Source of the DNA: Squalus acanthias
Taxonomy: Eukaryota
Reading direction: 5' to 3'
Length of the DNA stretch: 64,000 nt
Assembly: GCA_030390025.1 (NCBI GenBank)
Contig: CM059441.1
Coordinates: 20,708,001 to 20,772,000, forward strand
Within the stretch, counting starts at the first letter, position 1. Every line of letters starts with the position of its first letter. Both the position numbers and the translations under genes were made by a program. The notes beneath the pieces were generated by a model that worked only from the letters and a program-made list of their open reading frames with translations, had not been told where the DNA came from and searched no databases. Shown here piece after piece: positions 2,559 to 60,156 of the stretch.

Positions 2559-3020
2559 GTGTCAGTCATGGCTCAGTTGGTAGCATTTTCACCTCTGTGT
2601 CAGAAGGTTGTGGGTTCAAGTCCCACTCCAGAGACTTGAGTACAAAATCTAGGCTGACACTCCCAGTGCAGTACTGAGGGAGCGCTGGACTGCTGGAGGT
2701 GCCATCTTTTGGATGAAACATTAAACTGAGGCCCTGTTTGCTCTATCAGGTGGACATTTAAGATCCTATGGCCACGATTTCGAAGAAGAGCAGCAAGTTA
2801 TCCTCCGAGTTCTGGCCAATATTTATCCCTCAATCAACATCACTAAAACAGATTATCTGGTCATTATCACATTGCTGTTTGTGGGAGCTTGCTGTGCGCA
2901 AATTGGCTGCTGTGTTTCCTACATTACAACAGTGACTACACTTCAAAAGTACTTCATTGGCTGTAAAGCACTTTGGGACGTCCTGAGGTCATGAAAGGCG
3001 CTATATAAATGCAAGTTCTT
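2559..3020 (+). mobile_element. tRNA-derived Deu-domain SINE (SacSINE1-like)
   Basis: A box tggctcagttgg, B box ggttcaagtcc, conserved core, and tail aaaggcgctatataaatgcaag. Confidence 0.8.
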
Positions 3021-3398
3021 TCTTTTGCTTTTTTTGCTTTAAGAGGCAGAGTGTACTTGGCACAGTCCAGTGAACTGGTTTACTTAACCATGTTACTTTA
3101 GCATGAAAGTACTTTGTGACCCTGCAGGAGGTGGTCCTGGAACAACTTCATATTGTTATCTGAACAAACGTCATTATAGAGCTGTATTCCCTTCTTTGAA
3201 TGGACTGTCGTTTTCAGAGAACTACACCTAATGAAAAGTTCTTTTTTAAGCACTGAAAGTTTCACTATTTTGCTATCTTGTATCACAGACTTTATCCCAA
3301 TGAACGCAGTGGGTTCTGGGCCTTCTTCAAGCCCAGCAACATTCCATAGTAATTGGCTACATAAAATGCATTACCTGACATGCCATCCTGAATACCAG

Positions 3399-3852
3399 AA
3401 AGACTTGCATTTATTTGACACCTTTCACGACATCAGGATGTCCCAAAGCGTTTTACAGCCAATGAAATACTTTTGAAGTGTAGTCACTGTTGTAATGTAG
3501 GAAACGCAGCAGCCAATTTGCGCACAGCAAGCTCCCACTAACAGCAATGTGAAAATGAGCAGGTAATCTGTTTTTTTTGTGATGTTGATTGAGGGATAAA
3601 TATTGGCCAGGAGACCAACTCCCCTGCTCTTCTTTGAAATAGTGCCGTGTGGATCTTTTACATCCACCTGAGAGAGCAGACGGGGCCTCGGTTTAAAGCC
3701 TCATCCGAAAGACGGCACTTCCGACAGTGCAGCGCTCCCTCAGCACTGCACTGGAGTGTCAGCCTAGATTTTTGTGCTCAAGTCTCTGGCGTGGGACTTG
3801 AACCCACAACCTTCAAGATCTACAGAGCTGAGAGTGCCAACCACTGAGCCAC
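3399..3852 (-). mobile_element. Deu-domain SINE
   Basis: Inverted copy of 2559-3020. Confidence 0.8.
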
Positions 3853-4468
3853 GGATGGCATTCATCACCTCTGTATAGTCAAACATCCACCGAAAGATTG
3901 CTATCAAATATCAGAACTTCCATTGTGTAGGAAAAAGTTTATTAGCAAAAATATTGGTGAACAGATTGAACCTCGGTCTCCTGTTGCCATTGTATATGAG
4001 GATGTGCAATTAATTTGATGTGTGATCACTTGACACAATAAGCATCTTGCGTTGCAATGGTGTTAAGAAATAAACCTTATAAAGGCAGTTGGCGGCAATT
4101 TACCGTTACTCTGTAAAACTAAAAATTATTGTCAGCGATATCAGTGGATGAACAGACAACTCATCCGTGTGACATTGAGACATTAGCCCATTTATTTTGA
4201 GATTTACCACGTCTGCTGAAACAGTGGAGAGTGGATTGCAATACAAAAAGCGTTGAGTATTCGCCTGTTACACCGACAGTAATCTCTAGGCTGTATTTCT
4301 TCAAATACCGCCCAGGCTGTAGGATTGAAGCTGTCAGCTGAGATGGAGACACTGAGTAAAATGGAGCTTCCTTATGAAGTTAGCAAGTATCGGTTGACAG
4401 ATGCATTATGATTGAAATGCAAGTGTAGAGCATGGAACTGCTTCTGAAACACCGGCCGTGCTCTCGAA

Positions 4469-4597
4469 CTAGAAAGCCTCCTTGTGCTCATGGTCAGACT
4501 TCTCATAAATATAAGCGGGGACGTCTTCATGTGTCTGAGTGATGGATTTGCGTCTTGCCATGTCAGGTGTGAAATCTTGTCCATCATCCCTGAAAGA
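4469..4597 (-). CDS. Gene A terminal exon, SFRDDGQDFTPDMARRKSITQTHEDVPAYIYEKSDHEHKEAF*
   Basis: Acceptor (T)9-AAAG in phase 0, matching the upstream donor. Ungapped homology to the gene B terminal exon (EDVPAY vs EDAPTY at identical codon positions). TAG at 4469-4471. Confidence 0.75.
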   Translation of the reverse strand, partial: SFRDDGQDFTPDMARRKSITQTHEDVPAYIYEKSDHEHKEAF

Positions 4598-4818
4598 CTT
4601 TAAAAAAAAAGTGTTGGTAAATTATTCTCGTCATACAATAGCGCGTCGGTTGATGTAAATTAGAAGAAAATTTAGCAATTGTGGCTGATAAAGGATTCCA
4701 TTATAACAAAGTTGCATTTTCTTTTGTTTTACTTTTTTACATAAGTTAATTAAGAAGCTGGAATAAATTAGATGAAGGAGGTACCCATACAACAACAACA
4801 ACAACTTGTATTTATATA

Positions 4819-5104
4819 TGATGTGGAGATGCCGGTGTTGGACTGGGGTGGACAAAAGTGAGAAGTCGCACAACACCAGGTTATAGTCCAACAGCTTTAT
4901 TTGAAATCACAAGCTTTCGGAGCCGAGGTGTGATAAAGGGCAGTTGGAAAGATTAACTGTAATCATCTGGCAGTGTTCTCTGACTATATATGCTGTGACT
5001 ATATGCATCTCTTCACTTCACCTGACAAAGGGGCAGCGCTCCGAAAGCTTGTGATTTCAAATAAAGCTGTTGGACTATAACCTGGTGTTGTGCGACTTCT
5101 CACA
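4819..5104. mobile_element. Penelope-like terminal fragment in inverted configuration, inserted in an L2 3' tail
   Basis: About 65-bp inverted arms, 12-bp TSD TGTATTTATATA, and a degenerate hammerhead core (CTGACAA) at 5018-5054. Confidence 0.75.
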
Positions 5105-6860
5105 TGTATTTATATAGTGCCTTTAACACAGTAAAACATCCCAAGGCGCTTCACAGGAGTATTATAAGACAAAAAGTTTGACACCGAGCCACATAAGGAG
5201 AAATTAGGGCAGGTGACCAAAAGCTCGGTCAAAGAGGTAGGTGTTAAGGAGCGTCTTAAATGAGGAAAGAGAGGCGGAGAGGTTTAGGGAGGGAATTCCA
5301 GAGCTTAGGGCCCAGGCAACAGAAGGCACGGCCACCAATGGTTGAGCGATTATAATCAGGGATGCTCAAGAGGGCAGAATTAGAGGAGTGCAGATATCTC
5401 GGGAGGGGCGGGGGGGGGGGGGGGGTTGGAGGAGATTACAGAGCTAGGGAGGGGCGAGGCCATGGAGGGATTTGAAAACAAGGATGAGAATTTTGAAATT
5501 GAGGAGTTGCTTAACTTTTCATCATGCCCATAAGAATTTTTTAATAATCATTTTTGTTTCTGTATAAATATATGAATGTAACATTTCAACCTGCTTTCCA
5601 ATTGATCCATGCTAACCACTTGGTACTATCAGTCGCATGGATAGTAGGGATCGGTTGGATCCAAGAATCACTTTATACAACAAACACAGAAGGCAGCCAT
5701 TACACCTCCACACCAAAAACTGAAAGTTCAAGTAGGTTGAAAGCTTGGGCCTGGTCAAGCTCGGGGTCCCTCACAAGCCTTGAACTCAATTTATGAGCAG
5801 ATGCAAGCAGGGGTATCAGCTGCTGAAGTCGACTCAATGTTTGTCTCTTTCTGTATGTTTCTTGTCCTCTCACCTCCCATGGAGACCTGGAATCCAGTCG
5901 GGGTTCAACCTTCTAACAACTGTAGCAATGATCTTGCTTTGGGAGTGGAGGACTGGTGAGTTCTGTTTTGTTATGTTAACATGTAAGTCCTAATTCTAGG
6001 TTATGAGCCCTCAGCTCAAGCCCCAGGAAGCAACAGGATGGTGGTGGTGGTGGGGGGGGGGGGGGGGTGTGCGGGCAGGGAGCCTGGGATAGAGTCACTG
6101 AGAAAGTGGGAAAGAATGAATGGGGAAGAGGCAGGAGTGAGCCATCAGGGATGCCAGGAGGCACTAAACAGGGAGGTTAGGATTAGGAGTTGTATGGGAT
6201 AAGGTTGGGACGAGGAGGGATCAAGATGGGATAATATTGCACCACCTATCTTGCACCAGGAGCCCGATGAAAATTAAGCTCTAGTGCTTAAAATGATGCT
6301 ACAAAGATAAGAAATTTAACACACAGGCCAGGATTCTCCTGCCAGCTGCAGCATCAGAAGAGGCAGCTGTGGAGCTAAAGGGGCAGAAGCGCCTCGAAGA
6401 TTGGCACATTGGTCTCCTTGTAGGCCTCGGCAGAGACTAAGGGGGAAAAATTCAGTTGGTTGGTGCCTCCAGTTGGTGCCTGGCTATGAGTTACTGCCGG
6501 GAACCTCAGCACCAGGCAGATCATGACGTCAGTGAGCGTGCAACGCTCACTGGGCACCCGATCTGCAAAATTAATTGTCGCCCCCTGCCTTAGCGCCTCA
6601 CCCCGACAGGGATAGGGAGAGGCGGCGTCAAGCAGGTGGATGCCGGCTCCAGGGACGCTACTTAAAGGGATCATGAGTAATGAGTCACAGCTGTCAGGTT
6701 AGTGCTGATTCACTGCTTCCTTGTCAGTTTGACATTGTGCAACAGTTTAATTCAGTCATTTAAAGGTTGTTTAGTATCAGGAGTGTTGTGGCTACTAAAA
6801 ATTAGTTACATTTATTCTCACAACATATCAAAGTGCTACACTTGGTTACATTAATAGGGG

Positions 6861-12926: not shown

Positions 12927-12982
12927 CATAGCATTGTAAACTGGGTTAGCTTCTTCCTCTGTGTGTGTTAATCCTTTCTGAC
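12927..12982 (-). CDS. Gene A cytoplasmic exon, (G)QKGLTHTEEEANPVYNAM
   Basis: tcgttcttag acceptor and gtaaga donor, phase 1 to 0. Its 56-nt length and phases are identical to gene B exon 57039-57094. Confidence 0.85.
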
Positions 12983-15262: not shown

Positions 15263-15369
15263 CAGCTGCCGTCTGCTTTCTGGATCTTCTGACAAAAATA
15301 ATAGCAAGAAGGAGCAGTATAACCAAAACTCCGAGCGCAGGTACCAGAATGATGATTAAGTTTGTGGTG
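15263..15369 (-). CDS. Gene A transmembrane exon, TTNLIIILVPALGVLVILLLLAIIFVRRSRKQTAA
   Basis: Polypyrimidine ttcttctgtttccatag acceptor and gtaagt donor, phase 2 to 1. A 23-residue hydrophobic run is followed by the basic stop-transfer RRSRK. Confidence 0.9.
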
Positions 15370-22944: not shown

Positions 22945-23005
22945 CTTTCATTTCCCCAGTCGGTTGTTCTCTGAAGTTCAGTGGTCACTGTTGGTGTTGT
23001 AAGAG
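22945..23005 (-). CDS. Gene A Thr-rich stalk exon, (A)LTTPTVTTELQRTTDWGNE(S)
   Basis: ttgtttttacag acceptor and gtagtt donor, phase 1 to 2, exactly bridging the V exon and the TM exon. Mucin-like Thr/Pro composition. Confidence 0.8.
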
Positions 23006-29215: not shown

Positions 29216-29545
29216 CTTCAAGAACATTCAATTTGACAGGAGCCATTTCATCGTTGCCCAGCATTGCTATCCCACACCAATACCATCCTGCATCTTCGAG
29301 TGATAATTGTTTCATTGTTACAGAGAATATCCCACTGGTTTGGTTGTCCACAATGAGCGGTCTGTTGAATCGTTCCTGTTGTATTCTTTGAGTGCCAGCA
29401 ATCACAGTGCATGAGTTTCTCCGTGTTCCTTTACACCAGTACTTCTCAAAATACCTGTTACTTGGTGTGTTATATCGACAATGGACAGTGATGGATTCTC
29501 CTAATTTTCCAGTCACCTCCCCTGGTCCTATTATTCCGTGTGAAC
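29216..29545 (-). CDS. Gene A IgV exon 3 (membrane-proximal), CD300/pIgR-type V domain
   Basis: 330 nt, phase 1-1, cag acceptor and gtaagt donor. Motifs: B-strand Cys (VHCRY), KYWC-x7-C second disulfide, DAGWYWCG. Confidence 0.92.
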
Positions 29546-32094
29546 CTGTTAGAACAGGGAGCAATGGGTTGTGTCATGACCATGTATTCGAAGAAAGCAT
29601 GGATGAGGAAAAAGCCACTCAATCTAGCGAGCTTGATTCTTCCATTGACCATGTATAATTTGGACTATCACGGACAACTGAGTGATACCAAGAGCACTGC
29701 TTGTCAAGTCCCTTAATGATCATAAATCAGCACAGTGCAAATCCCTTGAAAGGCTTTACTGAAATGTTAGTGACACGAGTTTCGTTTGTAACTGGTCAGT
29801 TTTTCTAGATGTCTGTATGGATTTGTGTTCCACTTTAGTGTTCCGCACTAAACCTTCCTCCAATCTTATTACTATGGTTACATTCAGTCAGAAGTCCTCC
29901 TCCCATCCACATGAAGAATTGGAAGTTATACCTAAAAGGAAAGATTGAACAGGCTGGGGCACTTTTCTCTCGAAAAGAGAAGACTGAAGGGTGAGGTGAT
30001 AGAGGTCTTCAGGATTATGAAAGGGTTCAATAGGGTAGACGTAGAGAAGGTGTTTCCACTTGCGGCCAAGACCAGAACTAGGAGCCATAAATATAAAGTT
30101 AGTCATTAATAAATCTAATAAGGAATTCAGGAGAAACATCATTACCCAGAGAGTGGTCAGAATGTGGAACATCTACCACAAGGGGAAGTTGAGGTGTGTA
30201 GCATGGGTGCATTTAAGGGGAAGCTAGATAAACACATGAGGAAGAAAGGAATAGAAGGATATGTTGATGGGGTTAGATGAAGAGGGGTGGGAGGAGGCTC
30301 ATGTGGAACATAAACACTGGCATGGACCTGTTGGGCCAAATGGCCTGTTTCTGTGCTGTAAATACTTTGTAAGTAAAAATATTTAAAGAAACACATACCT
30401 TTCACCCACTATTCAACCCAATAGCTATGTTGATTTTGTGAACCTAAACAGTAATCATAAAGGCATACTTGATGATTCAGTGGGACCGATTTTCATTCCC
30501 CTGCCAGGTGGAAATAGGGCAGTAGCATGATTAAAATGACAGCACTTACTGCCCCATTCCCATCAACATCGAGATCTCTGTCATTTTTCCAGCGGCCTTG
30601 AAATGGATGGCCCGGGTGCCAGCCAGAAACACGGAAATCGGAGTCCTGTGACATCTATAGGACCCTGGTGCAACTTTACAGTATGAATGGGTGGCGCATG
30701 TGTCGCGTACCTCTGCCCATTGGTACTTGGTATTGAGTAGTCTAACCAGCAGTCCTTAAAGGGCCGCTGCAGCCCACTCAGACAAAGTATTAAAAGAAAG
30801 GGTTTTTACATTATTATTATCAGAAGAGGAGAAGCATTAAAGCACCTTCTGGCTCCACAAATATCGAACACCGCCCCCACCCCCCCCCCCCCCCCACCCC
30901 ATCATCCCCCTTGCCTCACCTTCTGCAGCCCTCCCCACTGCTTTAAATTACCTACAGCAGGCGCTGGGCTCCGCAATAGAGTTGTCAGATCTCTGACCCT
31001 TCCGATCAGCGAGCTGCTCCAAAAATGCGAGCAGTCGCTGAAAATGGATCGGGCCTTGGACCACTTCCACCGGGTAGGTGGTAGGGTCACTCTGCCCATC
31101 TCCTACCAGCCTCCCGCCCGCCCGAGGGAATCGTTCACTTGAAAATCGGTCACAAGAGAACTTAAACTTAAATCAATGGAGAGTAAATTGCTTCATTTAA
31201 AAGTGGTAATTTGCTGAGGATGGGGTGTTGGGTGGTGGTGGTGGTGGGGGGAGGGGGCAAGAAATATGGGGCAAAATGACTAAACACTTGGAGAAACAAG
31301 AGTTCACCAGAAACAAAAAAACAAAAGATGCTGGAAACACTCAGCAGGTCAGTCAGCATCTGTGGAGAGAAACAGACAAGTTAATGTTTTGAGTGTGAAC
31401 GCTTTTTCATAACTGAAAAATAACAGTTAGACCGGCATATTAATTCAATCAGAAAAAGGAAGGGGCGGGGGGGAGTATATATATACCTATAATAAATAAC
31501 AAAAACAATCAAACCCAGAGGAGTATGAGGAGCACAATGTAACAGATCAATCTCATTCAAGTAATGGATAGAAGCATTCAGACATTAAAGAAGCAAAGGG
31601 TGCCAGATGTGAACCAGATGTGGGCCGTGTGGGAGGAGGTGAATGGGCAGGTGCTCCATAGCCTGCGTTTTCACAGGAAGGCGCCAAGGGAAGTGCAGCT
31701 GGAATTAAGCCTCCCACTCACTTTGCTATTTACACACCCTTTGTCTCTTTAATGCCTTAATAATTCTATCCATTATTTGACGATTATTTGCTACATTATA
31801 CCGCACACGATTCCTTTGTTTGTTCGTTATGTACATTTTCCGCCCTCCTTTTTATAATTGCATCGACATGCTTGCCTGCCTCTCTGAAGCATGTTCCGCA
31901 CCTGAAAGATTGGGCCAGGATTTGCTGGGAAAGTAACGGCGACTTTAATGCGGAGGCCGTCATTAGTGTGAGCTCATTAATCATACATTAATGACCAAGA
32001 ATGTTTAAACAGATAACAGCCACAAGGAACAGTTCATTTATCGGCATGCTTATACTGTACTTGAAGTAAAATGGTGATTAATTACTTATCTTAC

Positions 32095-32424
32095 CTTCAA
32101 GAACATTCAATTTGACAGAAGCCATTTCATCGTTGCCCAGCATTGTTATCCCACACCAATACCATCCTGCATCTTCGAGTGATAATTGTTTCATTGTTAC
32201 AGAGAATATCCCACTGGTTTGGTTGTCCACAATGAGTGGTCTGTTGAATCGTTCCTGTTGTATTCTTTGAGTGCCAGCAATCACGGTGCATGAATATCTC
32301 CGTGTTCCTTTACACCAGTACTTCTCAGAATTCCTGTTACTTGGTGTGTTATATCGACAATGGACAGTGATGGATTCTCCTAATGTTCCATTCACCTCCC
32401 CTGGTCCTATTATTCCGTGTGAAC
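32095..32424 (-). CDS. Gene A IgV exon 2
   Basis: 330 nt, phase 1-1, cag acceptor and gtaaga donor. Same motifs, open frame. Confidence 0.9.
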
Positions 32425-34829
32425 CTGTTAGAACAGGGAGCAATGGGTTGTGTCGTGACCATGTATTCGAAGAAAGCATGGATGAGGAAAAAGCCACTCA
32501 ATCTAGCGAGCTTGATTCTTCCATTGACCATGTATAATTTGGACTATCACGGACAACTGAGTGATACCAAGAGCACTGCTTGTCAAGTCCCTTAATGATC
32601 ATAAATCAGCACAGTGCAAATCCCTTGAAAGGCTTTACTGAAATGTTAGTGACACGAGTTTCGTTTGTAACTGGTCAGTTTTTCTAGATGTCTGTATGGA
32701 TTTGTGTTCCACTTTAGTGTTCCGCACTAAACCTTCCTCCAATCTTATTACTATGGTTACATTCAGTCAGAAGTCCTCCTCCCATCCACATGAAGAATTG
32801 GAAGTTATACCTAAAAGGAAAGATAGAACAGGCTGGGGCACTTTTCTCTCGAAAAGAGAAGACTGAAGGGTGAGCTGATAGAGGTCTTCAGGATTATGAA
32901 AGGGTTCAATAGGGTAGACGTAGAGAAGGTGTTTCCACTTGCGGCCAAGACCAGAACTAGGAGCCATAAATATAAAGTTAGTCATTAATAAATCTAATAA
33001 GAAATTCAGGAGAAACATCATTACCCAGAGAGTGGTCAGAATGTGGAACATCTACCACAAGGGGAAGTTGAGGCGTGTAGCATAGGGGCATTTAAGGGGA
33101 AGCTAGATAAACACATGAGGAAGAAAGGAATAGAAGGATATGTTGATGGGGTTAGATGAAGAGGGGTGGGAGGAGGCTCATGTGGAACATAAACACTGGC
33201 ATGGACCTGTTGGGCCAAATGGCCTGTTTCTGTGCTGTAAATACTTTGTAAATAAAAATATTTAAAAAAAACACATACCTTTCACCCACTATTCAACCCA
33301 ATAGCTATGTTGATTTTGTGAACCTAAACAGTAATCATAAAGGCATACTTGATGATTCAGTGGGACCGATTTTCATTCCCCTGCCAGGTGGAAATAGGGC
33401 AGTAGCATGATTAAAATGACAGCACTTACTGCCCCATTCCCATCAACACCGAGATCTCTGTCATTTTTCCAGGGGCCTTGAAATGGATGGCCCGGGTGCC
33501 AGCCAGAAACACGGAAATCGGAGTCCTGTGACATCTATAGGACCCTGGTGCAACTTTACAGTACCAATGGGTGGCGCATGTGTCGCATACCTCTGCCCAT
33601 TGGTACTTGATATTGATTAGCCTAACCAGCAGTCCTTAAAGGGCCGCTGCAGCCCACTCAGACAAAGTATTAAAAGAAAGGGTTTTTACATTATTATTAT
33701 CGGAAGAGGAGGAGCATTAAAGCTCCTTCTGGCCCCACAAATATCAAACCCCCTTGCCTGACCTTCTGCAGCCCTCCTCACTCCTTTAAATCACCTACAC
33801 CGGGTAGGTGGCAGGGTCACTCTGCCCATCTCCTGCCCACCCGAGGGAATCGTTCACTTGAAAATCAGTCACAAGAGAACTTAAACTTAAATCAATGGAG
33901 AGTAAATCTTACAGATCTTACATATCATTGCTTCATTTAAAAGTGGTAATTTGCTGAGGATGGGGTGTTGGGTGGTGGTGGTGGGGGGGGGGGGGGTGAA
34001 GAAATATGGGGCAAGATGACTAAACACTTGGAGAAACAAGAGTTCACCAGAAACAAAAAAACAAAAGATGCTGGAAACACTCAGCAGGTCAGTCAGCATC
34101 TGTGGAGAGAAACAGACAAGTTAACGTTTTGAGTGTGAACGCTTCTTCATAACTGAAAAATAACAGTTAGACCGGCATATTAATTCAATCAGAAAAAGGA
34201 AAGGGGGGAGTATATATATACCTATAATAAATAACAAAAGCAATCAAACCCAGAGGAGTATGAGGAGCACAATGTAACAGATCAATCTCATTCAAGTAAT
34301 GGATAGAAGCATTCAGACATTAAAGAAGCAAAGGGTGCCAGATGTGAACCAGATGTGGGCCGTGTGGGAGGAGGTGAATGGGCAGGTGCTTCATAGCCTG
34401 CGTTTTCACAGGAAGGCGCCAAGGGAAGTGCAACTGGAATTAAGCCTCCTACTCACTTTGCTATTTACACACCCTTTGTCTCTTTAATGCCTTAATAATT
34501 CTATCCATTATTTGACGATTATTTGCTACATCATACCGCACACGATTCCTTTGTTTGTTCGTTATGTACATTTTCCACCCTCCTTTTTATAATTGCATCG
34601 ACATGCTTGCCTGCCTCTCTGAAGCATGTTCCGCACCTGAAAGATTGGGCCAGGATTTGCTGGGAAAGTAACGGCGACTTTAATGCGGAGGCCGTCATTA
34701 GTGTGAGCTCATTAATCATACATTAATGACCAAGCATGTTTAAACAGATAACAGTCACAAGGAACAGTTCATTTATCAGCATGCTTATACTGTACTTGAA
34801 GTAAAATGGTGATTAATTACTTATCTTAC

Positions 34830-35159
34830 CTTCAAGAACATTCAATTTGACAGAAGCCATTTCATCGTTGCCCAGCATTGTTATCCCACACCAATACCAT
34901 CCTGCATCTTCGAGTGATAATTGTTTCATTGTTACAGAGAATATCCCACTGGTTTGGTTGTCCACAATGAGTGGTCTGTTGAATCGTTCCTGTTGTATTC
35001 TTTGAGTGCCAGCAATCACGGTGCATGAATATCTCCGTGTTCCTTTACACCAGTACTTCTCAGAATTCCTGTTACTTGGTGTGCTATATCGACAATGGAC
35101 AGTGATGGAGTCTCCTAAAGTTGCAGTCACCTCCCCTGGTCCCATTATTCCGTGTGAAC
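34830..35159 (-). CDS. Gene A IgV exon 1 (N-terminal)
   Basis: 330 nt, phase 1-1, tag acceptor and gtaaga donor. Same motifs, open frame. Confidence 0.9.
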
Positions 35160-36041
35160 CTATTAGAACAGGGAGCAATGGGTTGTGTCGTGACCATGTA
35201 TTCGAAGAAAGCATGGATGAGGAAAAAGCCACTCAATCTAGCGAGCTTGATTCTTCCATTGACCATGTATAATTTGGACTATCACGGACAACTGAGTGAT
35301 ACCAAGAGCACTGCTTGTCAAGTCCCTTAATGATCATAAATCAGCACAGTGCAAATCCCTTGAAAGGCTTTACTGAAATGTTAGTGACACGAGTTTCGTT
35401 TGTAACTGGTCAGTTTTTCTAGATGTCTGTATGGATTTGTGTTCCACTTTAGTGTTCCGCACTAAACCTTCCTCCAATCTTATTACTATGGTTACATTCA
35501 GTCAGAAGTCCTCCTCCCATCCACATGAAGAATTGGAAGTTATACCTAAAAGGAAAGATAGAACAGGCTGGGGCTCTTTTCTCTCGAAAAGAGAAGACTG
35601 AAGGGTGAGCTGATAGAGGTCTTCAGGATTATGAAAGGGTTCAATAGGGTAGACGTAGAGAAGGTGTTTCCACTTGCGGCCAAGACCAGAACTAGGAGCC
35701 ATAAATATAAATTTAGTCATTAATAAATCTAATAAGAAATTCAGGAGAAACGTCATTACCCAGAGAGTGGTCAGAATGTGGAACATCTACCACAAGGGGA
35801 AGTTGAGGCGTGTAGCATAGGTGCATTTAAGGGGAAGCTAGATAAACACATGAGGAAGAAAGGAATAGAAGGATATGTTGATGGGGTTAGATGAAGAGGG
35901 GTGGGAGGAGGCTCATGTGGAACATAAACACTGGCATGGACCTGTTGGGCCAAATGGCCTGTTTCTGTGCTGTAAATACTTTGTAAGTAAAAATATAAAA
36001 AAAAACACATACCTTTCACCCACTATTCAACCCAATAGCTA

Positions 36042-37467
36042 AAGAACATAGAACATAGAACAGTACAGCACAGTACAGGCCCTTCGGCCCTCGATGTTGT
36101 GCCGAGCATTGTCCGAGACCAAGATCAAGCTATCACACTCCCCATCACTCTGGTGTGCTCCATGTGCTTATCCAATAACCGCTTGAAAGTTCCTAAAGTG
36201 TCTGACTCCACTATCACAGCAGGCAGTCCATTCCACACCCCAACGACTCTCTGAGTAAAGAATCTACCTCGGACATCCCTTCTATATCTCCCCCCATGCA
36301 CCTTATAGTTATGCCCCCTTGTAACAGCTGCCTCTACCCGAGGAAATAGTCTCTGAACATCCACTCTATCTATCCCCCTCATCATCTTATAAACCTCTAT
36401 TAAGTCGCCTCTCATCCTCCTCCGCTCTAAAGAGAAAAGCCCCAACTCCCTCAATCTTTCCTCATAAGACCTCCCCCCCAAACCAGGCAGCATCCTGGTA
36501 AATCTCCTTTGCACTCTTTCCAATGCTTCCACGTCCTTCCTATAGTGAGGTGACCAGAACTGCACACAATATTCCAAATGTGGTCTCACCAAGGTCCTGT
36601 ACAGTTGCAGCATAACCTCACGGTTCTTAAACTCAAAACCTCTGTTAATAAACGCCAACACACCATAGGCCTTCTTTACTGCTCTATTAATTTGAGTGGC
36701 AACCTTCAGAGATCTGTGGATATGAACCCCCAGATCCCTCTGCTCCTCCACGTTCCTCAGAACCCTGCCGTTGACCCTGTAATCCTTATTCAAATTTGCC
36801 CTACCAAAATGAATCACCTCGCACTTATCAGGGTTAAATTCCATCTGCCATTTTTCGGCCCAGCTCTGCATCCTATCAATGTCTCTTTGCAGCCTACAAC
36901 AGCCCTCCACCTCATCCACTGCTCCACCAATCTTGGTGTCATCAGCAAATTTACTGATCCACCCTTCAGTCCCCTCCTCCAAGTCATTGATAAAAATCAC
37001 AAACAGCAGAGGACCCAGCACCGACCCCTGTGGCACACCGCTGGTAACTGGTCTCCAGTCCGAAAATGTTCCATCCACCACCACCCTCTGCCTTCTATGA
37101 GATAGCCAGTTACTTATCCAATCGGCCAAATTTCCCTCTATCCCACAACTCCTTACTTTCTTCATGAGCCGACCATGGGGAACCTTATCAAACGCCTTAC
37201 TAAAATCCATGTATACGACATCAACTGCTCTACCTTCATCTACACACTTAGTTACCTCCTCAAAGAATTCAATCAAATTTGTTAGGCAAGACTTACCCTT
37301 CATGAATCCGTGTTGACTATCCCTGATTAAGTTGCCCCTTTCCAAATGGTCATAAATCCTATCCCTCAGGACCTTTTCCATTATCTTACCAACCACCGAA
37401 GTAAGACTAACCGGCCTATAATTACCAGGGTCATTCCTATTTCCTTTCTTGAAGAGAGGAACAACAA
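36042..37467 (-). mobile_element. Young 5'-truncated CR1 LINE with an uninterrupted 423-aa RT/C-terminal frame
   Basis: GVPQGSVLGP, FADD and YCVQFW motifs, and a (TTCTATG)n 3' tail. The empty site aatagctatgttg is visible in repeat units 1 and 2. Confidence 0.95.
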
Positions 37468-38949
37468 TGTTGATTTTGTGAACCTAAACAGTAATCATAA
37501 AGGAATACTTGATGATTCAGTGGGACCGATTTTCATTCCCCTGCCAGGTGGAAAAAGGGCAGTAGCATGATTAAAATGACAGCACTTACTGCCCCATTCC
37601 CATCAACATCGAGATCTCTGTCATTTTTCCAGGGGCCTTGAAATGGATGGCCCGGGTGCCAGCCAGAAACACCGAAATCGGAGTCCTGTGACATGTATAG
37701 GACCCTGGTGCATCTTTACAGTATGAATGGGTGGCGCATGTGTCGCGTACCTCTGCCCATTGGTACTTGGTATTGAGTAGTCTAACCAGCAGTCCTTAAA
37801 GGGCCGCTGCAGCCCACTCAGACAAAGTATTAAAAGAAAGGGTTTTTACATTATTATTATCAGAAGAGGAGGAGCATTAAAGCACCTTCTGGCCCCACAA
37901 ATATCAAACCCCCTTGCCTGACCTTCTGCAGCCCTCCTCACTCCTTTAAATCACCTACACCGGGTAGGTGGTAGGGTCACTCTGCCCATCTCCTGCCCAC
38001 CCGAGGAAATCGTTCACTTGAAAATCAGTCACAAGAGAACTTAAACTTAAATCAATGGAGAGTAAATCTTACAGATCTTACATATCATTGCTTCATTTAA
38101 AAGTGGTAATTTGCTGAGGATGGGGTGTTGGGTGGTGGTGGGGGGGGGGCGGGGGGGCAAAGAAATATGGGGCAAAATGACTAAACACTTGGAGAAACAA
38201 GAGTTCACCAGAAACAAAAAAACAAAAGATGCTGGAAACACTCAGCAGGTCAGTCAGCATCTGTGGAGAGAAACAGACAAGTTAACGTTTTGAGTGTGAA
38301 CGCTTCTTCATAACTGAAAAATAACAGTTAGACCGGCATATTAATTCAATCAGAAAAAGGAAAGGGGGGAGTATATATATACCTATAATAAATAACAAAA
38401 ACAAAAACAAAAACAAGCAAACCCAGAGGAGTACGAATAGCATAATGTAACAGATCAATCTCATTCAAGTAATGGATAGAAGCATTCAGACATTAAAGAA
38501 GCAAAGGGTGGCAGATGTCAACCAGATGTGGACCGTGTGGGAGGAGGTGAATGGGCAGGTGCTGCATCGCCTGTGTTTTCACAGGAAGGCGCCAAGGGAA
38601 GTGCAACTGAAAGTAAGCCTCCCACAAACTTTGCTATTTACACACCCTTTGTCTCTTTAATGCCTTAATAATTCCATCCATTATTTGACGATTTTTTGCT
38701 ACATCATACCGCACACGATTCCTCTGTTTGTTCGTTATGCACAATTTCCGCCCTCCTTTTTATAATTGCATCGACATGCTTGCCTGCCTCTCTGAAGCAT
38801 GTTCCGCACCTGAAAGATTGGGCCAGGATTTGCTGGGAAAGTAACGGCGAGTTTAATGCGCAGGCCGTCATTAGTGTGAGCTCATTAATCATACATTAAT
38901 GAGCTGACCTCCCTATATTCCATACCCCTTAATCTTCTCAAAGTACCAG

Positions 38950-43947: not shown

Positions 43948-45330
43948 CAATAGTTGGGAAAATGCTGGAATCTATTATAAAGGATGCAATAACTGGGCAC
44001 TGAGAAACTAATAGTAAGATTGGGCAGAGTCAACATGGATTTATGAAAGGGAAATCCTGTTTGACAAACCTATTGGAGTTCTTTGAGGATGTAACTAGTG
44101 GAGTAGACAAAGGGGAACCGGTAGATGTGGTGTATCTGGATTTTCAGAAGGCCTTCGATAAGGTCCCACACAAGAGGTTGGTGAACAAAATTAGGGCACA
44201 TGGAATTAGCAGTAATATACTATCATGGATTGAGAATTGGTTAACAGACAGAAAACAAAGAGTAGGGATAAACGGGTCTTTTTCAGGATGGCAGGCTGTG
44301 ACTAGTGGGGTACCGCAAGGATCGGTGCTTGGGGCCCAGCTATCCACAATCTATATCAATGATTTGGAGGAGGGGACTAAATGTAACATTTCCAAATTTG
44401 CTGATGATACAAAGCTAGGTGGCAGTGTCAGTTGTGAAGAGGATGTGAAGAGGCTTCAAGGGGATCTCGACAGCCTCAGTGAGTGGGCAAGAACATGGCA
44501 GATGGAATATAATGTGGATAAATGTGAAGTTATCCACTTTGGTAGAAAAAACAGAAAGGCAGAGTATTTCCTAAATGGTGAAAGATTGGGGAATGCAGAT
44601 GCTCAAAGGGACCTGGGTGTCCTTGTACATGAGTCACTGAAAGTGAATGTGCAGGTGCAGCAAGCCATTAGGAAGGCAAATGGTATGCTGGCCTTCATTA
44701 CAAGAGGATTTGAGTACGGGAGTAAAGAAGTCTTACTCCAATTATATGGGACCTTGGTGAGACCACACCTGGAGTACTGTGTACAATTTTGGTCTCCTTA
44801 CCTAAGGAAGGATATACTTGCCATAGAGGGAGTGCAATGAAGGTTCACGAGATTGATTCCTGGGAAGGCGGGACAGTCTTATGAGAAGAGATTGAGTAAA
44901 CTAGGCCTGTATTCTCTTGAATTCAGAAGAATGAAAGGGGATCTCATTGAAGCATACAAAATTATTACAGGGCTTGATAGGATGGATGCTGGGAGAATGT
45001 TTCCCTTGGCTGTGAGTCTAGAACCAGGGGCCACAGCCTCAAGATAAAGGGTAGGCCATTCAGGACTGAGATGAGAAGAAATTTCTTCACACAGAGGGTG
45101 GTGAACCTTTGGAATTCTCTACCCCAGAGGGCTGTGGAGGCTCAGTCATTGGGTATATTCAAAACAGAAGTCAATAGATTTCTGACTAGTAAGGGCATCA
45201 AGGGATATGGCGATAGGGCCGGTGAATGGAGTTGAGGCAGAAGATCAGCCATGATCTCATTGAATGGTGGAGCAGGCACGAAGGGCCGAATGGCCTACTC
45301 CTGCTCCTATTTCTTATGTTCATATGTTCT
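43948..45330 (+). mobile_element. 5'-truncated CR1 LINE with a stop and a frameshift
   Basis: RT ORF 44043-44840 (GVPQGS, FADD) and a CR1 3' UTR. It interrupts an older LINE. Confidence 0.92.
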
Positions 45331-48729: not shown

Positions 48730-48778
48730 CTGATAACGAAAGAGTGATGAGGATGATAGTAAATGCAATGTTTTTCAT
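48730..48778 (-). CDS. Gene A first coding exon, signal peptide MKNIAFTIILITLSLS(G)
   Basis: AACATG start, basic residue then hydrophobic core, gtaagg donor in phase 1. It joins to GSHG-IMGP of the V exon, completing a typical signal peptide. Confidence 0.85.
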
Positions 48779-54177: not shown

Positions 54178-54369
54178 TTACTTTTTGAATACAATAGTAG
54201 AATACTCTGTTGGTTCTGAAGCAAGAGGTTCGGTAACTGAAGGCTTGATTGCCTCTTGACTGTTGGAAGGTTTCACGTTATCGTAAGTAGGGGCGTCCTC
54301 CTGAGGGCGATCACTGGGCTGAATCGTCACAGTGGCATAAGTAACTCCTTCTTCAAACTCTCTGGACAA
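54178..54369 (-). CDS. Gene B terminal exon, inhibitory tail with ITIM VTYATV, YDNV and ITSM TEYSTI
   Basis: ctctttgtcttcag acceptor in phase 0, then 63 codons and TAA. Canonical V-x-Y-x-x-V and T-x-Y-x-x-I motifs. Confidence 0.9.
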   Translation of the reverse strand: MSREFEEGVTYATVTIQPSDRPQEDAPTYDNVKPSNSQEAIKPSVTEPLASEPTEYSTIVFKK

Positions 54370-57038: not shown

Positions 57039-57094
57039 CACAGAGTTCGACTTTGGAATAGAATTTTCTATTGTTGATTCTTTCTCTCTGTTAT
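57039..57094 (-). CDS. Gene B cytoplasmic exon, (D)NREKESTIENSIPKSNSV
   Basis: tttctattttctag acceptor and gtaagg donor, 56 nt, phase 1 to 0. Confidence 0.85.
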
Positions 57095-58700: not shown

Positions 58701-60055
58701 TAAACGAATTTAAAAAAAATCACCTCATGCAAGAACGCCTTCATATCGATAGCCATAAAACAGGGAGTCATCTGTGGGGCTGATCTGTCACTTATCTGCA
58801 GACTTATTGGGTTTCCTATCCCCTCGTTTATGCCTGTCATGTTTTAATCCTCTCCCTCTTTCACCTTGGCAAATGCTGCCAATGGATTAAGATGCCTTTT
58901 TTTTTTAGCCTTTCCAATGGTTGTAAAAATGCTAGTCTCATTCTACTGTCACTTGCCTTTAATTGCCTCCACCCCTTTAAATTCCACCCTACACCTGCCC
59001 AAATCTTCACCTGGCGCTGTGAATCATTCTGACCCGCAAAAATCGAGTGCCATCCACAGATTACCATTCTGGTCAGATTTGTACTATTGAACAAACTTAT
59101 ATAAATTATATGGAAATTAGCCCCATTAACTGGTCATTCGTTTCATTTGCTGTTTGCAGGGCCTTGCTGTGTATAAATTGGCTGCCCTATTTGCCTACTT
59201 AACAACAATGATGACACTTCAAGAGTAATTCATTGAATGTAAACTATCTCAGCGTGTCCCGAGGATGCTGTGGAAAGGGAATCCTCTTTTTGTTTTCTAT
59301 ATGCTTTTGGAGTTGAGGAATATCTGCCTAATCTAATTATTCTCTAAGCTAAAGCACAGAACACTAACACTTAACAGCCCCAACAAATATGCAATTTGCA
59401 AGCGATTCCACATGAGATTATCTATCAGGTAATTAGATAATGGCAGTTTTAGTTACAAAGGAATCATTTAGTATTTGATAACTCATTCATTCATGTTGCT
59501 TTCGATATTTGTTCGAGAAATTATAATTGTTTCGCTTCTTTATCCAGTACTAAACTGGAGCATGGTCTTGACTCTCCGCACACAAATGATAGAGAAAATA
59601 CAGACAAGTAGTCCTTTTAATTAAGAAATAAAATCACCTTTGTGTTGCTAACGTGACTCCCAAGCATTTTAAAATCATCAGCGAGAAACAATACACGTTG
59701 CTCTGTGCCACATACAAATTGCCGGAATGTTACTGGCAATCCTGTCACCATTATATTGTGCTGAATAGACAGTGCAACAGAGTTCCTATTCTTCCAAAGA
59801 AATAAAGGAAGTACCGTCACTTTTGGCTGACTGCTTTGCTGAGATTAGTGCCAGATTGGAATGAAATTATGAGGAGATTTCTGTGCTGACAAGACGTACG
59901 TACTGCTGAAATGCAGATATAAGTAGAACCTCAACAGCAAGTCAAGACACGATCCGTTAAAGGTTGTTCCCTATCACGTGGTTGGTTTTCGTTTACTTTC
60001 TTCGAAAGATGCATTTACTTTGCTGCATTAAAATTGGTTTCGTTTCTGAACTCAC

Positions 60056-60156
60056 CGTTGTTTTTGTGCTTTCTTATTTTTTTGATAACTAGGATCACAA
60101 GTCCGAGAAGCATCATCGTCAAAATTCCAAAGATTAGTCCGAGTATTATGAAAAGC
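60056..60156 (-). CDS. Gene B transmembrane exon, LFIILGLIFGILTMMLLGLVILVIKKIRKHKNN
   Basis: aag acceptor after a pyrimidine tract and gtgag donor, phase 2 to 1. 24 uncharged, mostly hydrophobic residues are followed by KKIRKHK. Upstream exons were not identified in the window. Confidence 0.85.

What the first reader, a model, noticed from the sequence alone, without database searches (positions are those of the whole stretch)
4406..4597. Fossil ITIM and ITSM: gene A's last exon is a codon-for-codon disarmed copy of gene B's
Seen: reading through the TAG at 4469-4471 gives SFRDDGQDFTPDMARRKSITQTHEDVPAYIYEKSDHEHKEAF*FESTAGVSEAVPCSTLAFQS*. That is 192 nt from acceptor to TAA, exactly the length of gene B exon 54178-54369. 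The ungapped alignment has 12 of 63 identities (R3, T10, ED24-25, P27, Y29, K33, SE51-52, ST57-58, F61). The ITIM VTYATV is FTPDMA, the ITSM TEYSTI is VPCSTL and lies beyond the premature stop, and only the middle Tyr survives. Inference: both phosphatase-recruiting motifs were lost from an inhibitory ancestor, and even stop readthrough would not restore signalling.
Basis: partly seen in the sequence, partly recalled or inferred. Interest (0 to 1): 0.85.

Follow-up and report, generated by a model that had tools for sequence, protein, structure and literature searches.

The report
Shark immune receptor lost its brakes
Two neighbouring shark immune-receptor genes share the same tail exon, and one of them has lost both inhibitory docking sites, one through an ancient stop codon and one through a recent tyrosine loss, which is a familiar way for such receptor families to evolve.

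Summary
They are the same length and share 12 of 63 residues and 92 of 192 bases without gaps (z about 7). Offset 0 is the only good register. The similarity starts at the acceptor and stops at the shared TAA.

The genes are tandem CD300/pIgR-like receptors of a shark. Nine shark orthologues confirm the reading frame.

- The "premature" TAG is ancient. Five shark gene models end at that codon.
- Gene A's lineage is not generally disarmed. All nine other sharks keep the first-motif tyrosine; only this genome has Pro there.

The long two-motif tail is the ancestral form. It is kept in gene B of 12 elasmobranch species, counting this genome, and in a third paralogue.

Loss of ITIMs by a stop codon is well known from KIR and Ly49 receptors, so this is a new member of a known kind.

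The parts
4472..4597 (-). Gene A last exon, translated part (42 codons, SFRDD...KEAF). It holds the disarmed first motif: codons 9-14 read F-T-P-D-M-A, with the Pro codon at 4565-4567.
   Evidence: Translation. Acceptor aag|TCT read. RNA-like contig X1 record 5 ends at 4598. Orthologue models start the exon the same way.
4469..4471 (-). TAG stop codon of gene A, at the position where five other shark models also end.
   Evidence: The X2 contig covering 4310-4564 has 0 differences. Protein ends.
4406..4468 (-). Untranslated fossil of the second motif (20 codons plus TAA), with V-P-C-S-T-L opposite gene B's T-E-Y-S-T-I. It is now the start of the 3'UTR.
   Evidence: 30 of 60 bases identical to B against 15.2 +- 3.3 by chance, and the TAA is at the same position. 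Covered by RNA-like contigs in X1, X2 and X3.
4057..4405 (-). Rest of the 3'UTR of gene A, as far as the RNA-like contig reaches. It has no similarity to B's 3'UTR.
   Evidence: X1 record 5 spans 4057-4598 at depth 834.9. Flank identity is 19 of 60 and 18 of 60, at chance level.
12927..12982 (-). Gene A 56-nt cytoplasmic exon (phase 1 in, phase 0 out), carrying N-P-V-Y-N-A-M.
   Evidence: Sequence and splice sites. tblastn to Heptranchias is 16 of 18 identical. Same length and phases as B's exon, with 27 of 56 bases identical, p 0.002.
15263..15369 (-). Gene A transmembrane exon. There is no charged residue inside the hydrophobic span.
   Evidence: tblastn. Homologous to B's TM exon by tblastx.
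22945..23005 (-). Gene A stalk exon (phase 1 in, phase 2 out).
   Evidence: tblastn to P0013. Sequence and splice sites.
29216..35166 (-). Three near-identical V-set exons of gene A: 29216-29545, about 32099-32431 and about 34834-35166.
   Evidence: Pfam V-set E 8e-17 to 2e-16. Splice sites of the first copy. tblastn.
48730..48778 (-). Gene A leader exon, with the ATG at 48778.
   Evidence: tblastn is 14 of 17 identical to the Heptranchias leader. Sequence.
54178..54369 (-). Gene B last exon, with intact V-T-Y-A-T-V, T-Y-D-N-V and T-E-Y-S-T-I, ending in TAA.
   Evidence: 53 of 63 residues identical to Heterodontus B and 38-40 of 63 to skate B.
57039..57094 (-). Gene B 56-nt cytoplasmic exon (phase 1 in, phase 0 out). 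It has no tyrosine.
   Evidence: tblastn. Sequence.
60056..60156 (-). Gene B transmembrane exon. The 5' boundary is approximate.
   Evidence: tblastn is 25 of 34 identical to Stegostoma.

Best explanation
The window holds two tandem minus-strand genes of the shark CD300/pIgR-like family. Gene B is upstream. It has one V domain and a tail carrying an ITIM, a Y-x-N site and an ITSM, and it is the conserved inhibitory type. Gene A is downstream. It has three V exons and is the orthologue of the genes that NCBI labels 'polymeric immunoglobulin receptor-like' in other sharks. A and B descend from one ancestral gene and still share the same cytoplasmic exon layout: a TM exon ending in phase 1, a 56-nt exon, then a 192-nt terminal segment. 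In the A lineage a stop codon arose at codon 43 of the last exon. This happened at the latest before Heterodontiformes, Orectolobiformes and Carcharhiniformes split. It turned the second motif into 3'UTR, where it has decayed to 50% base identity without an indel. The A lineage then kept a single ITIM-like tyrosine (I-T-Y-D-M/I/V) in every other shark examined. In this genome's lineage that tyrosine became proline. Shown: homology, exon use, frame, the shared stop, and the order of the two losses. Inferred, not shown: this species' gene A cannot recruit SHP-1, SHP-2 or SHIP through ITIM or ITSM sites. It is well expressed, has no charged TM residue and keeps N-P-x-Y/Y-x-x-M, so it most likely acts as a non-inhibitory receptor, either an endocytic or PI3K-type receptor or a ligand-competing decoy, rather than as a classical DAP12- or FcR-gamma-coupled activating partner.
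For: Homology: for the last exons, for the 56-nt exons, and for the TM exons. V-set domains. Exon use: X1 record 5 is a 576-nt contig at depth 834.9 lying on 4057-4598 with 1 difference and no gap. Unique intron bins (5715-6317) have depth 0 in all 4 runs. Frame and orthology: the window A tail matches Heptranchias A at 24 of 38 residues and Heterodontus A at 23 of 42, but window B at only 13 of 60. The gene order B then A matches the fused models P0001, P0004, P0014, P0015 and P0016. Shared stop: 5 of 9 orthologue models end at the same codon, 2 more (Rhincodon, Cetorhinus) stop being alignable exactly there, Heptranchias leaves the exon 4 residues earlier, and the Mustelus model ends early. 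First-motif Tyr: 9 of 9 other sharks keep it. X1's single difference cannot turn the Pro codon into a Tyr codon, which needs two changes. Ancestral long tail: gene B in 5 other sharks, 6 batoids and this genome keeps both motifs and the same end. The tails of paralogue C in Heptranchias and Cetorhinus align to window B with z 11.2 and 5.3 and end at the same place. All exon phases of gene A are consistent and its reading frames are open.
Against: No binding or signalling was tested. The runs are only guessed to be RNA and are Logan contigs, so they cannot give strand, level or a true transcript end. The 34 unlaid letters of X1 record 5 were not shown, so the upstream partner exon is inferred, not seen. 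The position of that contig's single difference was not listed (625 difference rows were hidden). Independent stops at or near the same codon cannot be formally excluded. The A lineage was not found with a tail in batoids, so the duplication is undated. The species of the window is unknown, so 'lineage-specific' means only 'not in the nine species seen'. Met at +3 in most orthologues means the lost motif may already have been a weak ITIM.
Confidence: 0.8

Rival explanations
1. Gene A is a dying pseudogene. The TAG would be a recent disabling mutation and the tail changes would be neutral decay.
For: There is a stop inside a stretch that is still alignable to B's coding sequence, and the identity after the stop (30 of 60) is no lower than before it (59 of 126). 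This genome has also lost the one tyrosine that all orthologues keep.
Against: Five other shark models end at the same codon. All eight exon types of gene A have open frames, consensus splice sites and matching phases. The exon is covered at depth 834.9 in one RNA-like run. The pre-stop tail is 24 of 38 identical to Heptranchias.
Confidence: 0.07
2. The direction is reversed. The short A-type tail would be ancestral, and gene B would have lost a stop and evolved its second motif from former 3'UTR.
For: No outgroup tail outside elasmobranchs was recovered, so polarity rests on parsimony among paralogues.
Against: The long tail with the same three-tyrosine layout and the same end occurs in B of 12 elasmobranch species, counting this genome, and in the separate paralogue C. 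The A lineage is the only one that is short.
Confidence: 0.04
3. The post-stop segment is kept because it still works, through stop readthrough, an alternative splice that skips the TAG, or a 3'UTR element, rather than being a passive fossil.
For: There is no indel and no further in-frame stop in the 20 codons, the TAA is at the same place as in B, and the similarity ends sharply at the TAA. Three gene models (Rhincodon, Cetorhinus, Heptranchias) splice out of this exon near the stop into the next gene.
Against: Twenty random codons without a stop have a probability of about 0.38 by my arithmetic. Codon-position identities after the stop are flat at 11, 9 and 10 of 20. Neither key tyrosine would be restored. 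TAG followed by T is not a context I recall as leaky. Slow shark substitution rates (recalled, not tested) can explain 50% identity. The fused models may be prediction artefacts.
Confidence: 0.06
4. The resemblance between the two exons is chance or shared composition.
For: Only 19% residue identity, and the acceptor choice in A (aag at 4598 against cag at 4590) decides the equal length.
Against: z is 6 to 7 under base, residue and codon shuffles, with 0 of 50,000 and 0 of 20,000 shuffles reaching the observed value. There is a unique best offset. The acceptor is confirmed by the contig boundary and by orthologues. Less diverged A orthologues match B better, with Heptranchias A at 15 of 38 against window B.
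Confidence: 0.01

Closest known systems
Hominoid activating (short-tailed) KIR derived from inhibitory KIR, and the parallel Ly49 case (Abi-Rached and Parham 2005, PMC2213150; passages read)
   Same: A paralogue of an ITIM-bearing receptor loses inhibition through a stop codon in the cytoplasmic exon, so that former motif-coding sequence becomes 3'UTR. The inhibitory form is ancestral.
   Different: In KIR the stop lies within the membrane-proximal ITIM and is coupled to the gain of a charged TM residue that binds DAP12. Here the stop removes only the distal motif, no charged TM residue is present, and the proximal tyrosine survived in nine species and was lost separately in this genome. The event is also far older: at least as old as crown Galeomorphii, against 13.5-18 million years for KIR as that paper states.
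CD300 (CMRF35-like) receptor family: CD300A/CD300LF-type inhibitory members and ITIM-less members (family properties recalled, not taken from a call)
   Same: A single V-set domain of the CD300/pIgR type, a single-pass TM, and tails with tyrosine motifs. NCBI names the batoid B orthologues 'CMRF35-like molecule 1'.
   Different: Orthology to any particular mammalian CD300 gene was not tested. Gene A has several V domains, unlike mammalian CD300 genes.
Polymeric immunoglobulin receptor (pIgR) and teleost pIgR-like/CD300-like genes
   Same: Several tandem V-set domains of the same subtype and a cytoplasmic tail with tyrosine-based sorting-type motifs. The A orthologues carry the automatic name 'polymeric immunoglobulin receptor-like'. 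Weak whole-protein hits to coelacanth, bird and teleost pIgR have E 3e-27 to 1e-26.
   Different: No ligand or transcytosis evidence exists. The name is automatic. The tail is demonstrably derived from an ITIM/ITSM tail, which I do not recall being known for pIgR.

Membership tests
ITIM/ITSM-bearing inhibitory Ig receptor (CD300A/LF-like) | Extracellular V-set Ig domain | tested here: met
   Pfam PF07686 at E 8e-17 to 2e-16 on the three gene A V exons. Gene B's V exon lies outside the window, but its orthologues carry PF07686.
ITIM/ITSM-bearing inhibitory Ig receptor (CD300A/LF-like) | At least one cytoplasmic [S/I/V/L]-x-Y-x-x-[I/V/L] (ITIM) or T-x-Y-x-x-[V/I] (ITSM); consensus recalled | tested here: not met
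   For gene A, the translated tail has F-T-P-D-M-A at the first site, the second site lies beyond the stop and reads V-P-C-S-T-L, and the remaining tyrosines (N-P-V-Y-N-A-M, P-A-Y-I-Y-E) fit neither consensus. Gene B meets this feature with V-T-Y-A-T-V and T-E-Y-S-T-I.
ITIM/ITSM-bearing inhibitory Ig receptor (CD300A/LF-like) | Recruitment of SHP-1, SHP-2 or SHIP on tyrosine phosphorylation | not testable with these tools
   Needs co-immunoprecipitation or peptide pull-down.
Shark 'pIgR-like' multi-V lineage (gene A orthologues) | Tail exon alignable to the lineage and ending at the same stop | tested here: met
   17 of 29 to 24 of 38 residues identical to nine shark orthologues, against 13 of 60 to window B. 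Five models end at the same codon.
Shark 'pIgR-like' multi-V lineage (gene A orthologues) | Position directly downstream of the B-type gene on the same strand | tested here: met
   B's last exon is at 54178 and A's ATG is at 48778, both on the minus strand. Five fused models have the order B then A.
Shark 'pIgR-like' multi-V lineage (gene A orthologues) | Domain order D1 then D2 (two different V types) | tested here: not met
   The window has three D1-type exons (69-78% identical to D1 of Heptranchias and Heterodontus, 44-51% to their D2) and no separate D2 hit. This is a difference in architecture, not in orthology.
Shark 'pIgR-like' multi-V lineage (gene A orthologues) | Conserved I-[T/R]-Y-D-[M/I/V] in the tail | tested here: not met
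   Present in 9 of 9 other sharks; the window has F-T-P-D-M.
Activating partner of a paired receptor (DAP12- or FcR-gamma-coupled) | Charged residue (K, R, D or E) inside the TM helix | tested here: not met
   The TM exon 15263-15369 has no charged residue in its hydrophobic span; the R-R-S-R-K run follows the span.
Bona fide pIgR | Binds polymeric Ig or J chain and transcytoses it | not testable with these tools
   Only automatic names and weak whole-protein similarity are available.

The most novel reading that the evidence does not exclude
Gene A's lineage is a receptor line, conserved in nine sharks of six orders and so probably hundreds of millions of years old (age recalled, not computed), that was made from a CD300-type inhibitory receptor by truncating the tail and multiplying V domains. 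It could be the cartilaginous-fish counterpart of pIgR, a multi-V receptor with tyrosine-based sorting motifs. If so, the poly-Ig receptor architecture arose from an inhibitory CD300-like gene, and the ITSM fossil in the 3'UTR is the trace of that origin. In this species the last ITIM-like tyrosine has now gone as well, completing the change from a signalling receptor to a transport or decoy receptor.
Probability: 0.1. Interest if true: 0.7.

Novelty: new member of a known kind. Interest (0 to 1): 0.35.

Why it matters
It gives a clean, datable example from cartilaginous fish of how an inhibitory immune receptor is converted step by step: first a stop codon, then, much later, loss of the remaining tyrosine. 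The discarded motif is still readable in the 3'UTR. This shows that the process known from primate KIR and rodent Ly49 also operated early in jawed-vertebrate history, in a different receptor family (CD300/pIgR-like). It also provides a natural series for testing what these tails do: tail B with two motifs, tail A of other sharks with one, and tail A of this species with none. In addition it flags that NCBI models in at least eight shark species fuse neighbouring genes of this cluster. It does not reveal a new mechanism.

Tried and rejected
- blastn of the gene B region against the gene A region found only interspersed repeats. The exon pair is too diverged for it.
- Smith-Waterman search for a B counterpart of A's 56-nt exon gave nothing above shuffles (score 25.5 against 25.9 +- 2.4). 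The exon was later found by tblastn with orthologues.
- A +1/-1 local alignment of the extended regions picked only an A-rich 16-mer, because identity is below 50%.
- Gapped alignment of the 500-nt flanks gave z 2.0 upstream and z 1.0 downstream. No homology is detectable outside the exon.
- The alternative acceptor cag|GG at 4589 would give Gly then a stop in phase 0. It was rejected because the RNA-like contig includes 4590-4597 and ends at 4598, and because orthologues encode the residues of 4590-4597.
- Pfam finds nothing in B's tail.
- The representative search with B's tail gave only 2 hits.
- The first tail-restricted search gave only the three orectolobiform sharks.
- No paper on shark CD300/pIgR-like tails turned up in searches. 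One search found the KIR precedent. Passages in PMC7956327, PMC10801876, PMC4279169, PMC9321927 and PMC6509151 said nothing on a shark pIgR or CD300.
- Supplements were not consulted, and none bears on a claim here.
- No structure prediction was run, because the tails are short, motif-bearing segments.
- dN/dS was not computed. A and B are near saturation, and no orthologue DNA was available.
Full report
1. WHAT IS AT THE COORDINATES

Both are 192 nt long.

2. IS THE RESEMBLANCE MORE THAN CHANCE?

Yes.
Shuffling gives a mean of 4.17 +- 1.95 and p = 0.0007.
- The BLOSUM62 sum is 19 against -46 +- 15.
- 92 of 192 bases are identical against 48.8 +- 6.0, with 0 of 20,000 shuffles reaching that.
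- Shuffling whole codons gives 89 of 189 against 52.0 +- 6.1, with 0 of 50,000 reaching it.
- Of 121 offsets tried, offset 0 gives 92 identities and the runner-up gives 67.
- Identity rises at about -36 from the acceptor and falls back to background within about 40 nt of the TAA.
- The 60 nt after the TAA (19 of 60) and intron bases 31-90 (17 of 60) are at chance. Gapped alignment of the 500-nt flanks is not significant, at z 2.0 and 1.0.
- The untranslated part between TAG and TAA is significant alone: 30 of 60 against 15.2 +- 3.3.

One caveat applies. Near the stop, a one-codon local shift, or MAFFT's two compensating 3-codon gaps, fits the residues as well as the strict register does.

3. 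WHAT THE GENES ARE

Three minus-strand exons at 29216-29545, about 32099-32431 and about 34834-35166 are V-set Ig domains (Pfam E 8e-17 to 2e-16).

A HMMER scan of 1.84 billion representative proteins with gene B's tail found two proteins:
- a Stegostoma tigrinum 'polymeric immunoglobulin receptor-like' model of 638 aa;
- a skate cluster named 'CMRF35-like molecule 1'.

The Stegostoma model is a fusion of a B-type gene (residues 1-253) and an A-type gene (residues 289-638). Mapping it, and later the Heptranchias and Heterodontus models, onto the window by tblastn, together with reading the splice sites, gives the gene maps below.

Gene A:

| Exon | Coordinates | Note |
|---|---|---|
| Leader | 48730-48778 | ATG at 48778 |
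| V exons | 29216-29545, about 32099-32431, about 34834-35166 | three copies |
| Stalk | 22945-23005 | |
| TM | 15263-15369 | |
| Cytoplasmic | 12927-12982 | 56 nt |
| Last | 4597 downwards | |

Gene B:

| Exon | Coordinates | Note |
|---|---|---|
| TM | about 60056-60156 | 5' boundary approximate |
| Cytoplasmic | 57039-57094 | 56 nt |
| Last | 54178-54369 | |

Gene B's V exon lies beyond the window.

All phases of gene A fit together. A and B share the cytoplasmic layout: a TM exon leaving in phase 1, an exon of exactly 56 nt (27 of 56 bases identical, p 0.002), then the 192-nt segment in phase 0. The TM exons are also homologous. Every search was made exon by exon or with public proteins.

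4. IS THE EXON USED, AND IN THAT FRAME?

In phase 0 the second would give Gly followed by a stop.

- The look-up of sequencing runs found four runs holding the exon. They carry two coded organism labels, and all are Logan contigs guessed to be RNA.
- Laid on window:2700-8700, run X1 has one 576-nt contig at depth 834.9 lying on 4057-4598, with one difference and no gap. Thirty-four of its letters lie on nothing in the stretch.
- X2 has a contig on 4310-4564 with no difference. X3, under the other organism label, has one on 4231-4512 with one difference.
- Unique intron bins (5715-6317, and also 3102-3302) have depth 0 in all four runs. The runs therefore behave like transcriptomes.
- The contig contains 4590-4597 and breaks at the aag acceptor. 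The extra base at 4598 is what a preceding exon ending in G would give, and exon 12927-12982 ends in G.
- I could not see the 34 loose letters or the position of the one difference, because rows were hidden. The partner exon is therefore inferred.

Independently, nine shark orthologue models begin this exon with the same residues ([S/P/F/L]-F-[R/G]-D) directly after the N-P-x-Y exon. That fixes both the acceptor and the frame.

X2 confirms the TAG. X1's single difference cannot make a Tyr codon out of the Pro codon at 4565-4567, because two changes are needed.

5. ORDER OF THE LOSSES

A search with the A-type half of the Stegostoma model (an earlier, narrower one was) returned A orthologues from Stegostoma, Rhincodon, Chiloscyllium, Cetorhinus, Scyliorhinus torazame, S. 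canicula, Mustelus, Heterodontus and Heptranchias. Sequences are, and the tails were extracted.

(a) The stop.
- Five models (Stegostoma, Chiloscyllium, both Scyliorhinus, Heterodontus) end at the codon that matches the window's TAG.
- Rhincodon and Cetorhinus stop being alignable exactly there and run on into the next gene.
- Heptranchias leaves the exon four residues earlier.
- The Mustelus model ends early.
- The stop is therefore old. It is shared by Heterodontiformes, Orectolobiformes and Carcharhiniformes, all Galeomorphii, and by this genome.

(b) The first motif.
- All nine orthologues have I-[T/R]-Y-D-[M/I/V]. The +3 residue is V in the two Scyliorhinus, I in Stegostoma and M in the other six.
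- The window has F-T-P-D-M.
- Loss of the tyrosine is therefore younger and, among ten genomes, unique to this one.
- The motif it replaced probably already had Met at +3. By the consensus I recall, that is not a canonical ITIM.

(c) Closest orthologue. The window's A tail is closest to Heptranchias (24 of 38 identical, same length). The species itself remains unknown to me.

6. WHICH FORM IS ANCESTRAL?

- Gene B's tail, with V-T-Y-A-[T/S]-V, a middle Y-x-N in many species, [T/I/L]-E-Y-S-T-[I/V] and the same C-terminal end, is present in five other sharks, six batoids (Leucoraja, Amblyraja, Rhinoraja, Pristis, Narcine, Mobula) and this genome.
- A third paralogue, seen as the 3' half of the fused Heptranchias and Cetorhinus models, has the same three-tyrosine layout and the same end. 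It aligns to the window's B tail with z 11.2 and 5.3. The 3' end of the Rhincodon model does not align (z -0.5).
- Less diverged A tails are also closer to B than the window's A is: Heptranchias A matches window B at 15 of 38.

The long two-motif tail is therefore ancestral, and gene A is derived from it by a gained stop.

7. MECHANISM

Shown: gene A of this genome encodes no ITIM or ITSM consensus in its translated tail, has no charged residue in its TM span, keeps N-P-V-Y-N-A-M in the 56-nt exon and P-A-Y-I-Y-E in the last exon, and is represented at high depth in one RNA-like run.

Inferred:
- It cannot deliver ITIM- or ITSM-based inhibition.
- It is not a classical adaptor-coupled activating partner.
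- It more likely works as an endocytic or PI3K-type receptor, or as a decoy for the ligands of inhibitory relatives. The roles of N-P-x-Y and Y-x-x-M are recalled general knowledge.
- The post-stop segment is best read as a passive fossil. Its codon-position identities are flat (11, 9 and 10 of 20), and 50% identity is compatible with slow neutral decay in sharks (rate recalled).
- A retained function is not excluded.

8. COMPARISON WITH WHAT IS KNOWN

Conversion of inhibitory into non-inhibitory receptors by a stop codon in the tail exon is the textbook history of hominoid short-tailed KIR and, in parallel, of rodent Ly49. [quoted passage not shown]

The present case differs in four ways:
- the family (CD300/pIgR-like);
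- the age;
- the absence of a charged TM residue;
- its two-step course, with a long single-motif intermediate that nine sharks still carry.

I found no paper on these shark genes in searches. Paper PMC8563443, which might discuss pIgR origins, is not held. So 'not in print' means only 'not in this library under those terms'.

9. VERDICT

This is a tidy evolutionary example and a new member of a known kind, not a new mechanism. Interest is 0.35.

The main gaps are the following:
- The read evidence is contigs only.
- No functional test was possible.

Noticed in passing
window 29216-35166 (-): Gene A has three near-identical D1-type V exons. No D2-type V exon was found, although the other shark orthologues have D1 plus D2 (S. 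torazame has D1 plus two D2). All three copies match D1 of Heptranchias and Heterodontus at 69-78% and their D2 at only 44-51%.
   Followed up: partly
public proteins P0001, P0004, P0014, P0015, P0016 (B fused to A) and P0003, P0011, P0013 (A fused to a third gene): NCBI gene models in eight shark species fuse neighbouring genes of this cluster by splicing around the stop codons. These are either real conjoined transcripts or a recurrent annotation artefact.
   Followed up: no
window 58952-59008 (-): A possible optional cytoplasmic exon of gene B. It is 47% identical to the 'VEFKGMQ' segment found in skate, sawfish, manta and Heterodontus B proteins but absent from the Stegostoma, Chiloscyllium, Scyliorhinus and Mustelus models.
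   Followed up: no
window 54283-54300 (-) and public B tails: Gene B's middle tyrosine (T-Y-D-N-V, a Y-x-N site) is kept in this genome, in Mustelus and in five of the six batoids (Narcine has Y-A-N), but is lost in Stegostoma, Chiloscyllium, S. canicula and Heterodontus.
   Followed up: no
window 36128-37483 (-), 44004-44837 (+) and many other places: The 44-kb gene A is full of interspersed repeats: reverse-transcriptase ORFs and several SINE-like families that recur 4 to 10 times in the window. These repeats account for the very high contig depths at 2700-3900 and 4710-5500.
   Followed up: no
P0017 (Leucoraja erinacea 'pIgR-like isoform X2'): A skate protein with four nearly identical D2-type V domains and no TM segment. 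It may be the batoid counterpart of the A lineage. Its membrane isoform and tail were not seen.
   Followed up: no
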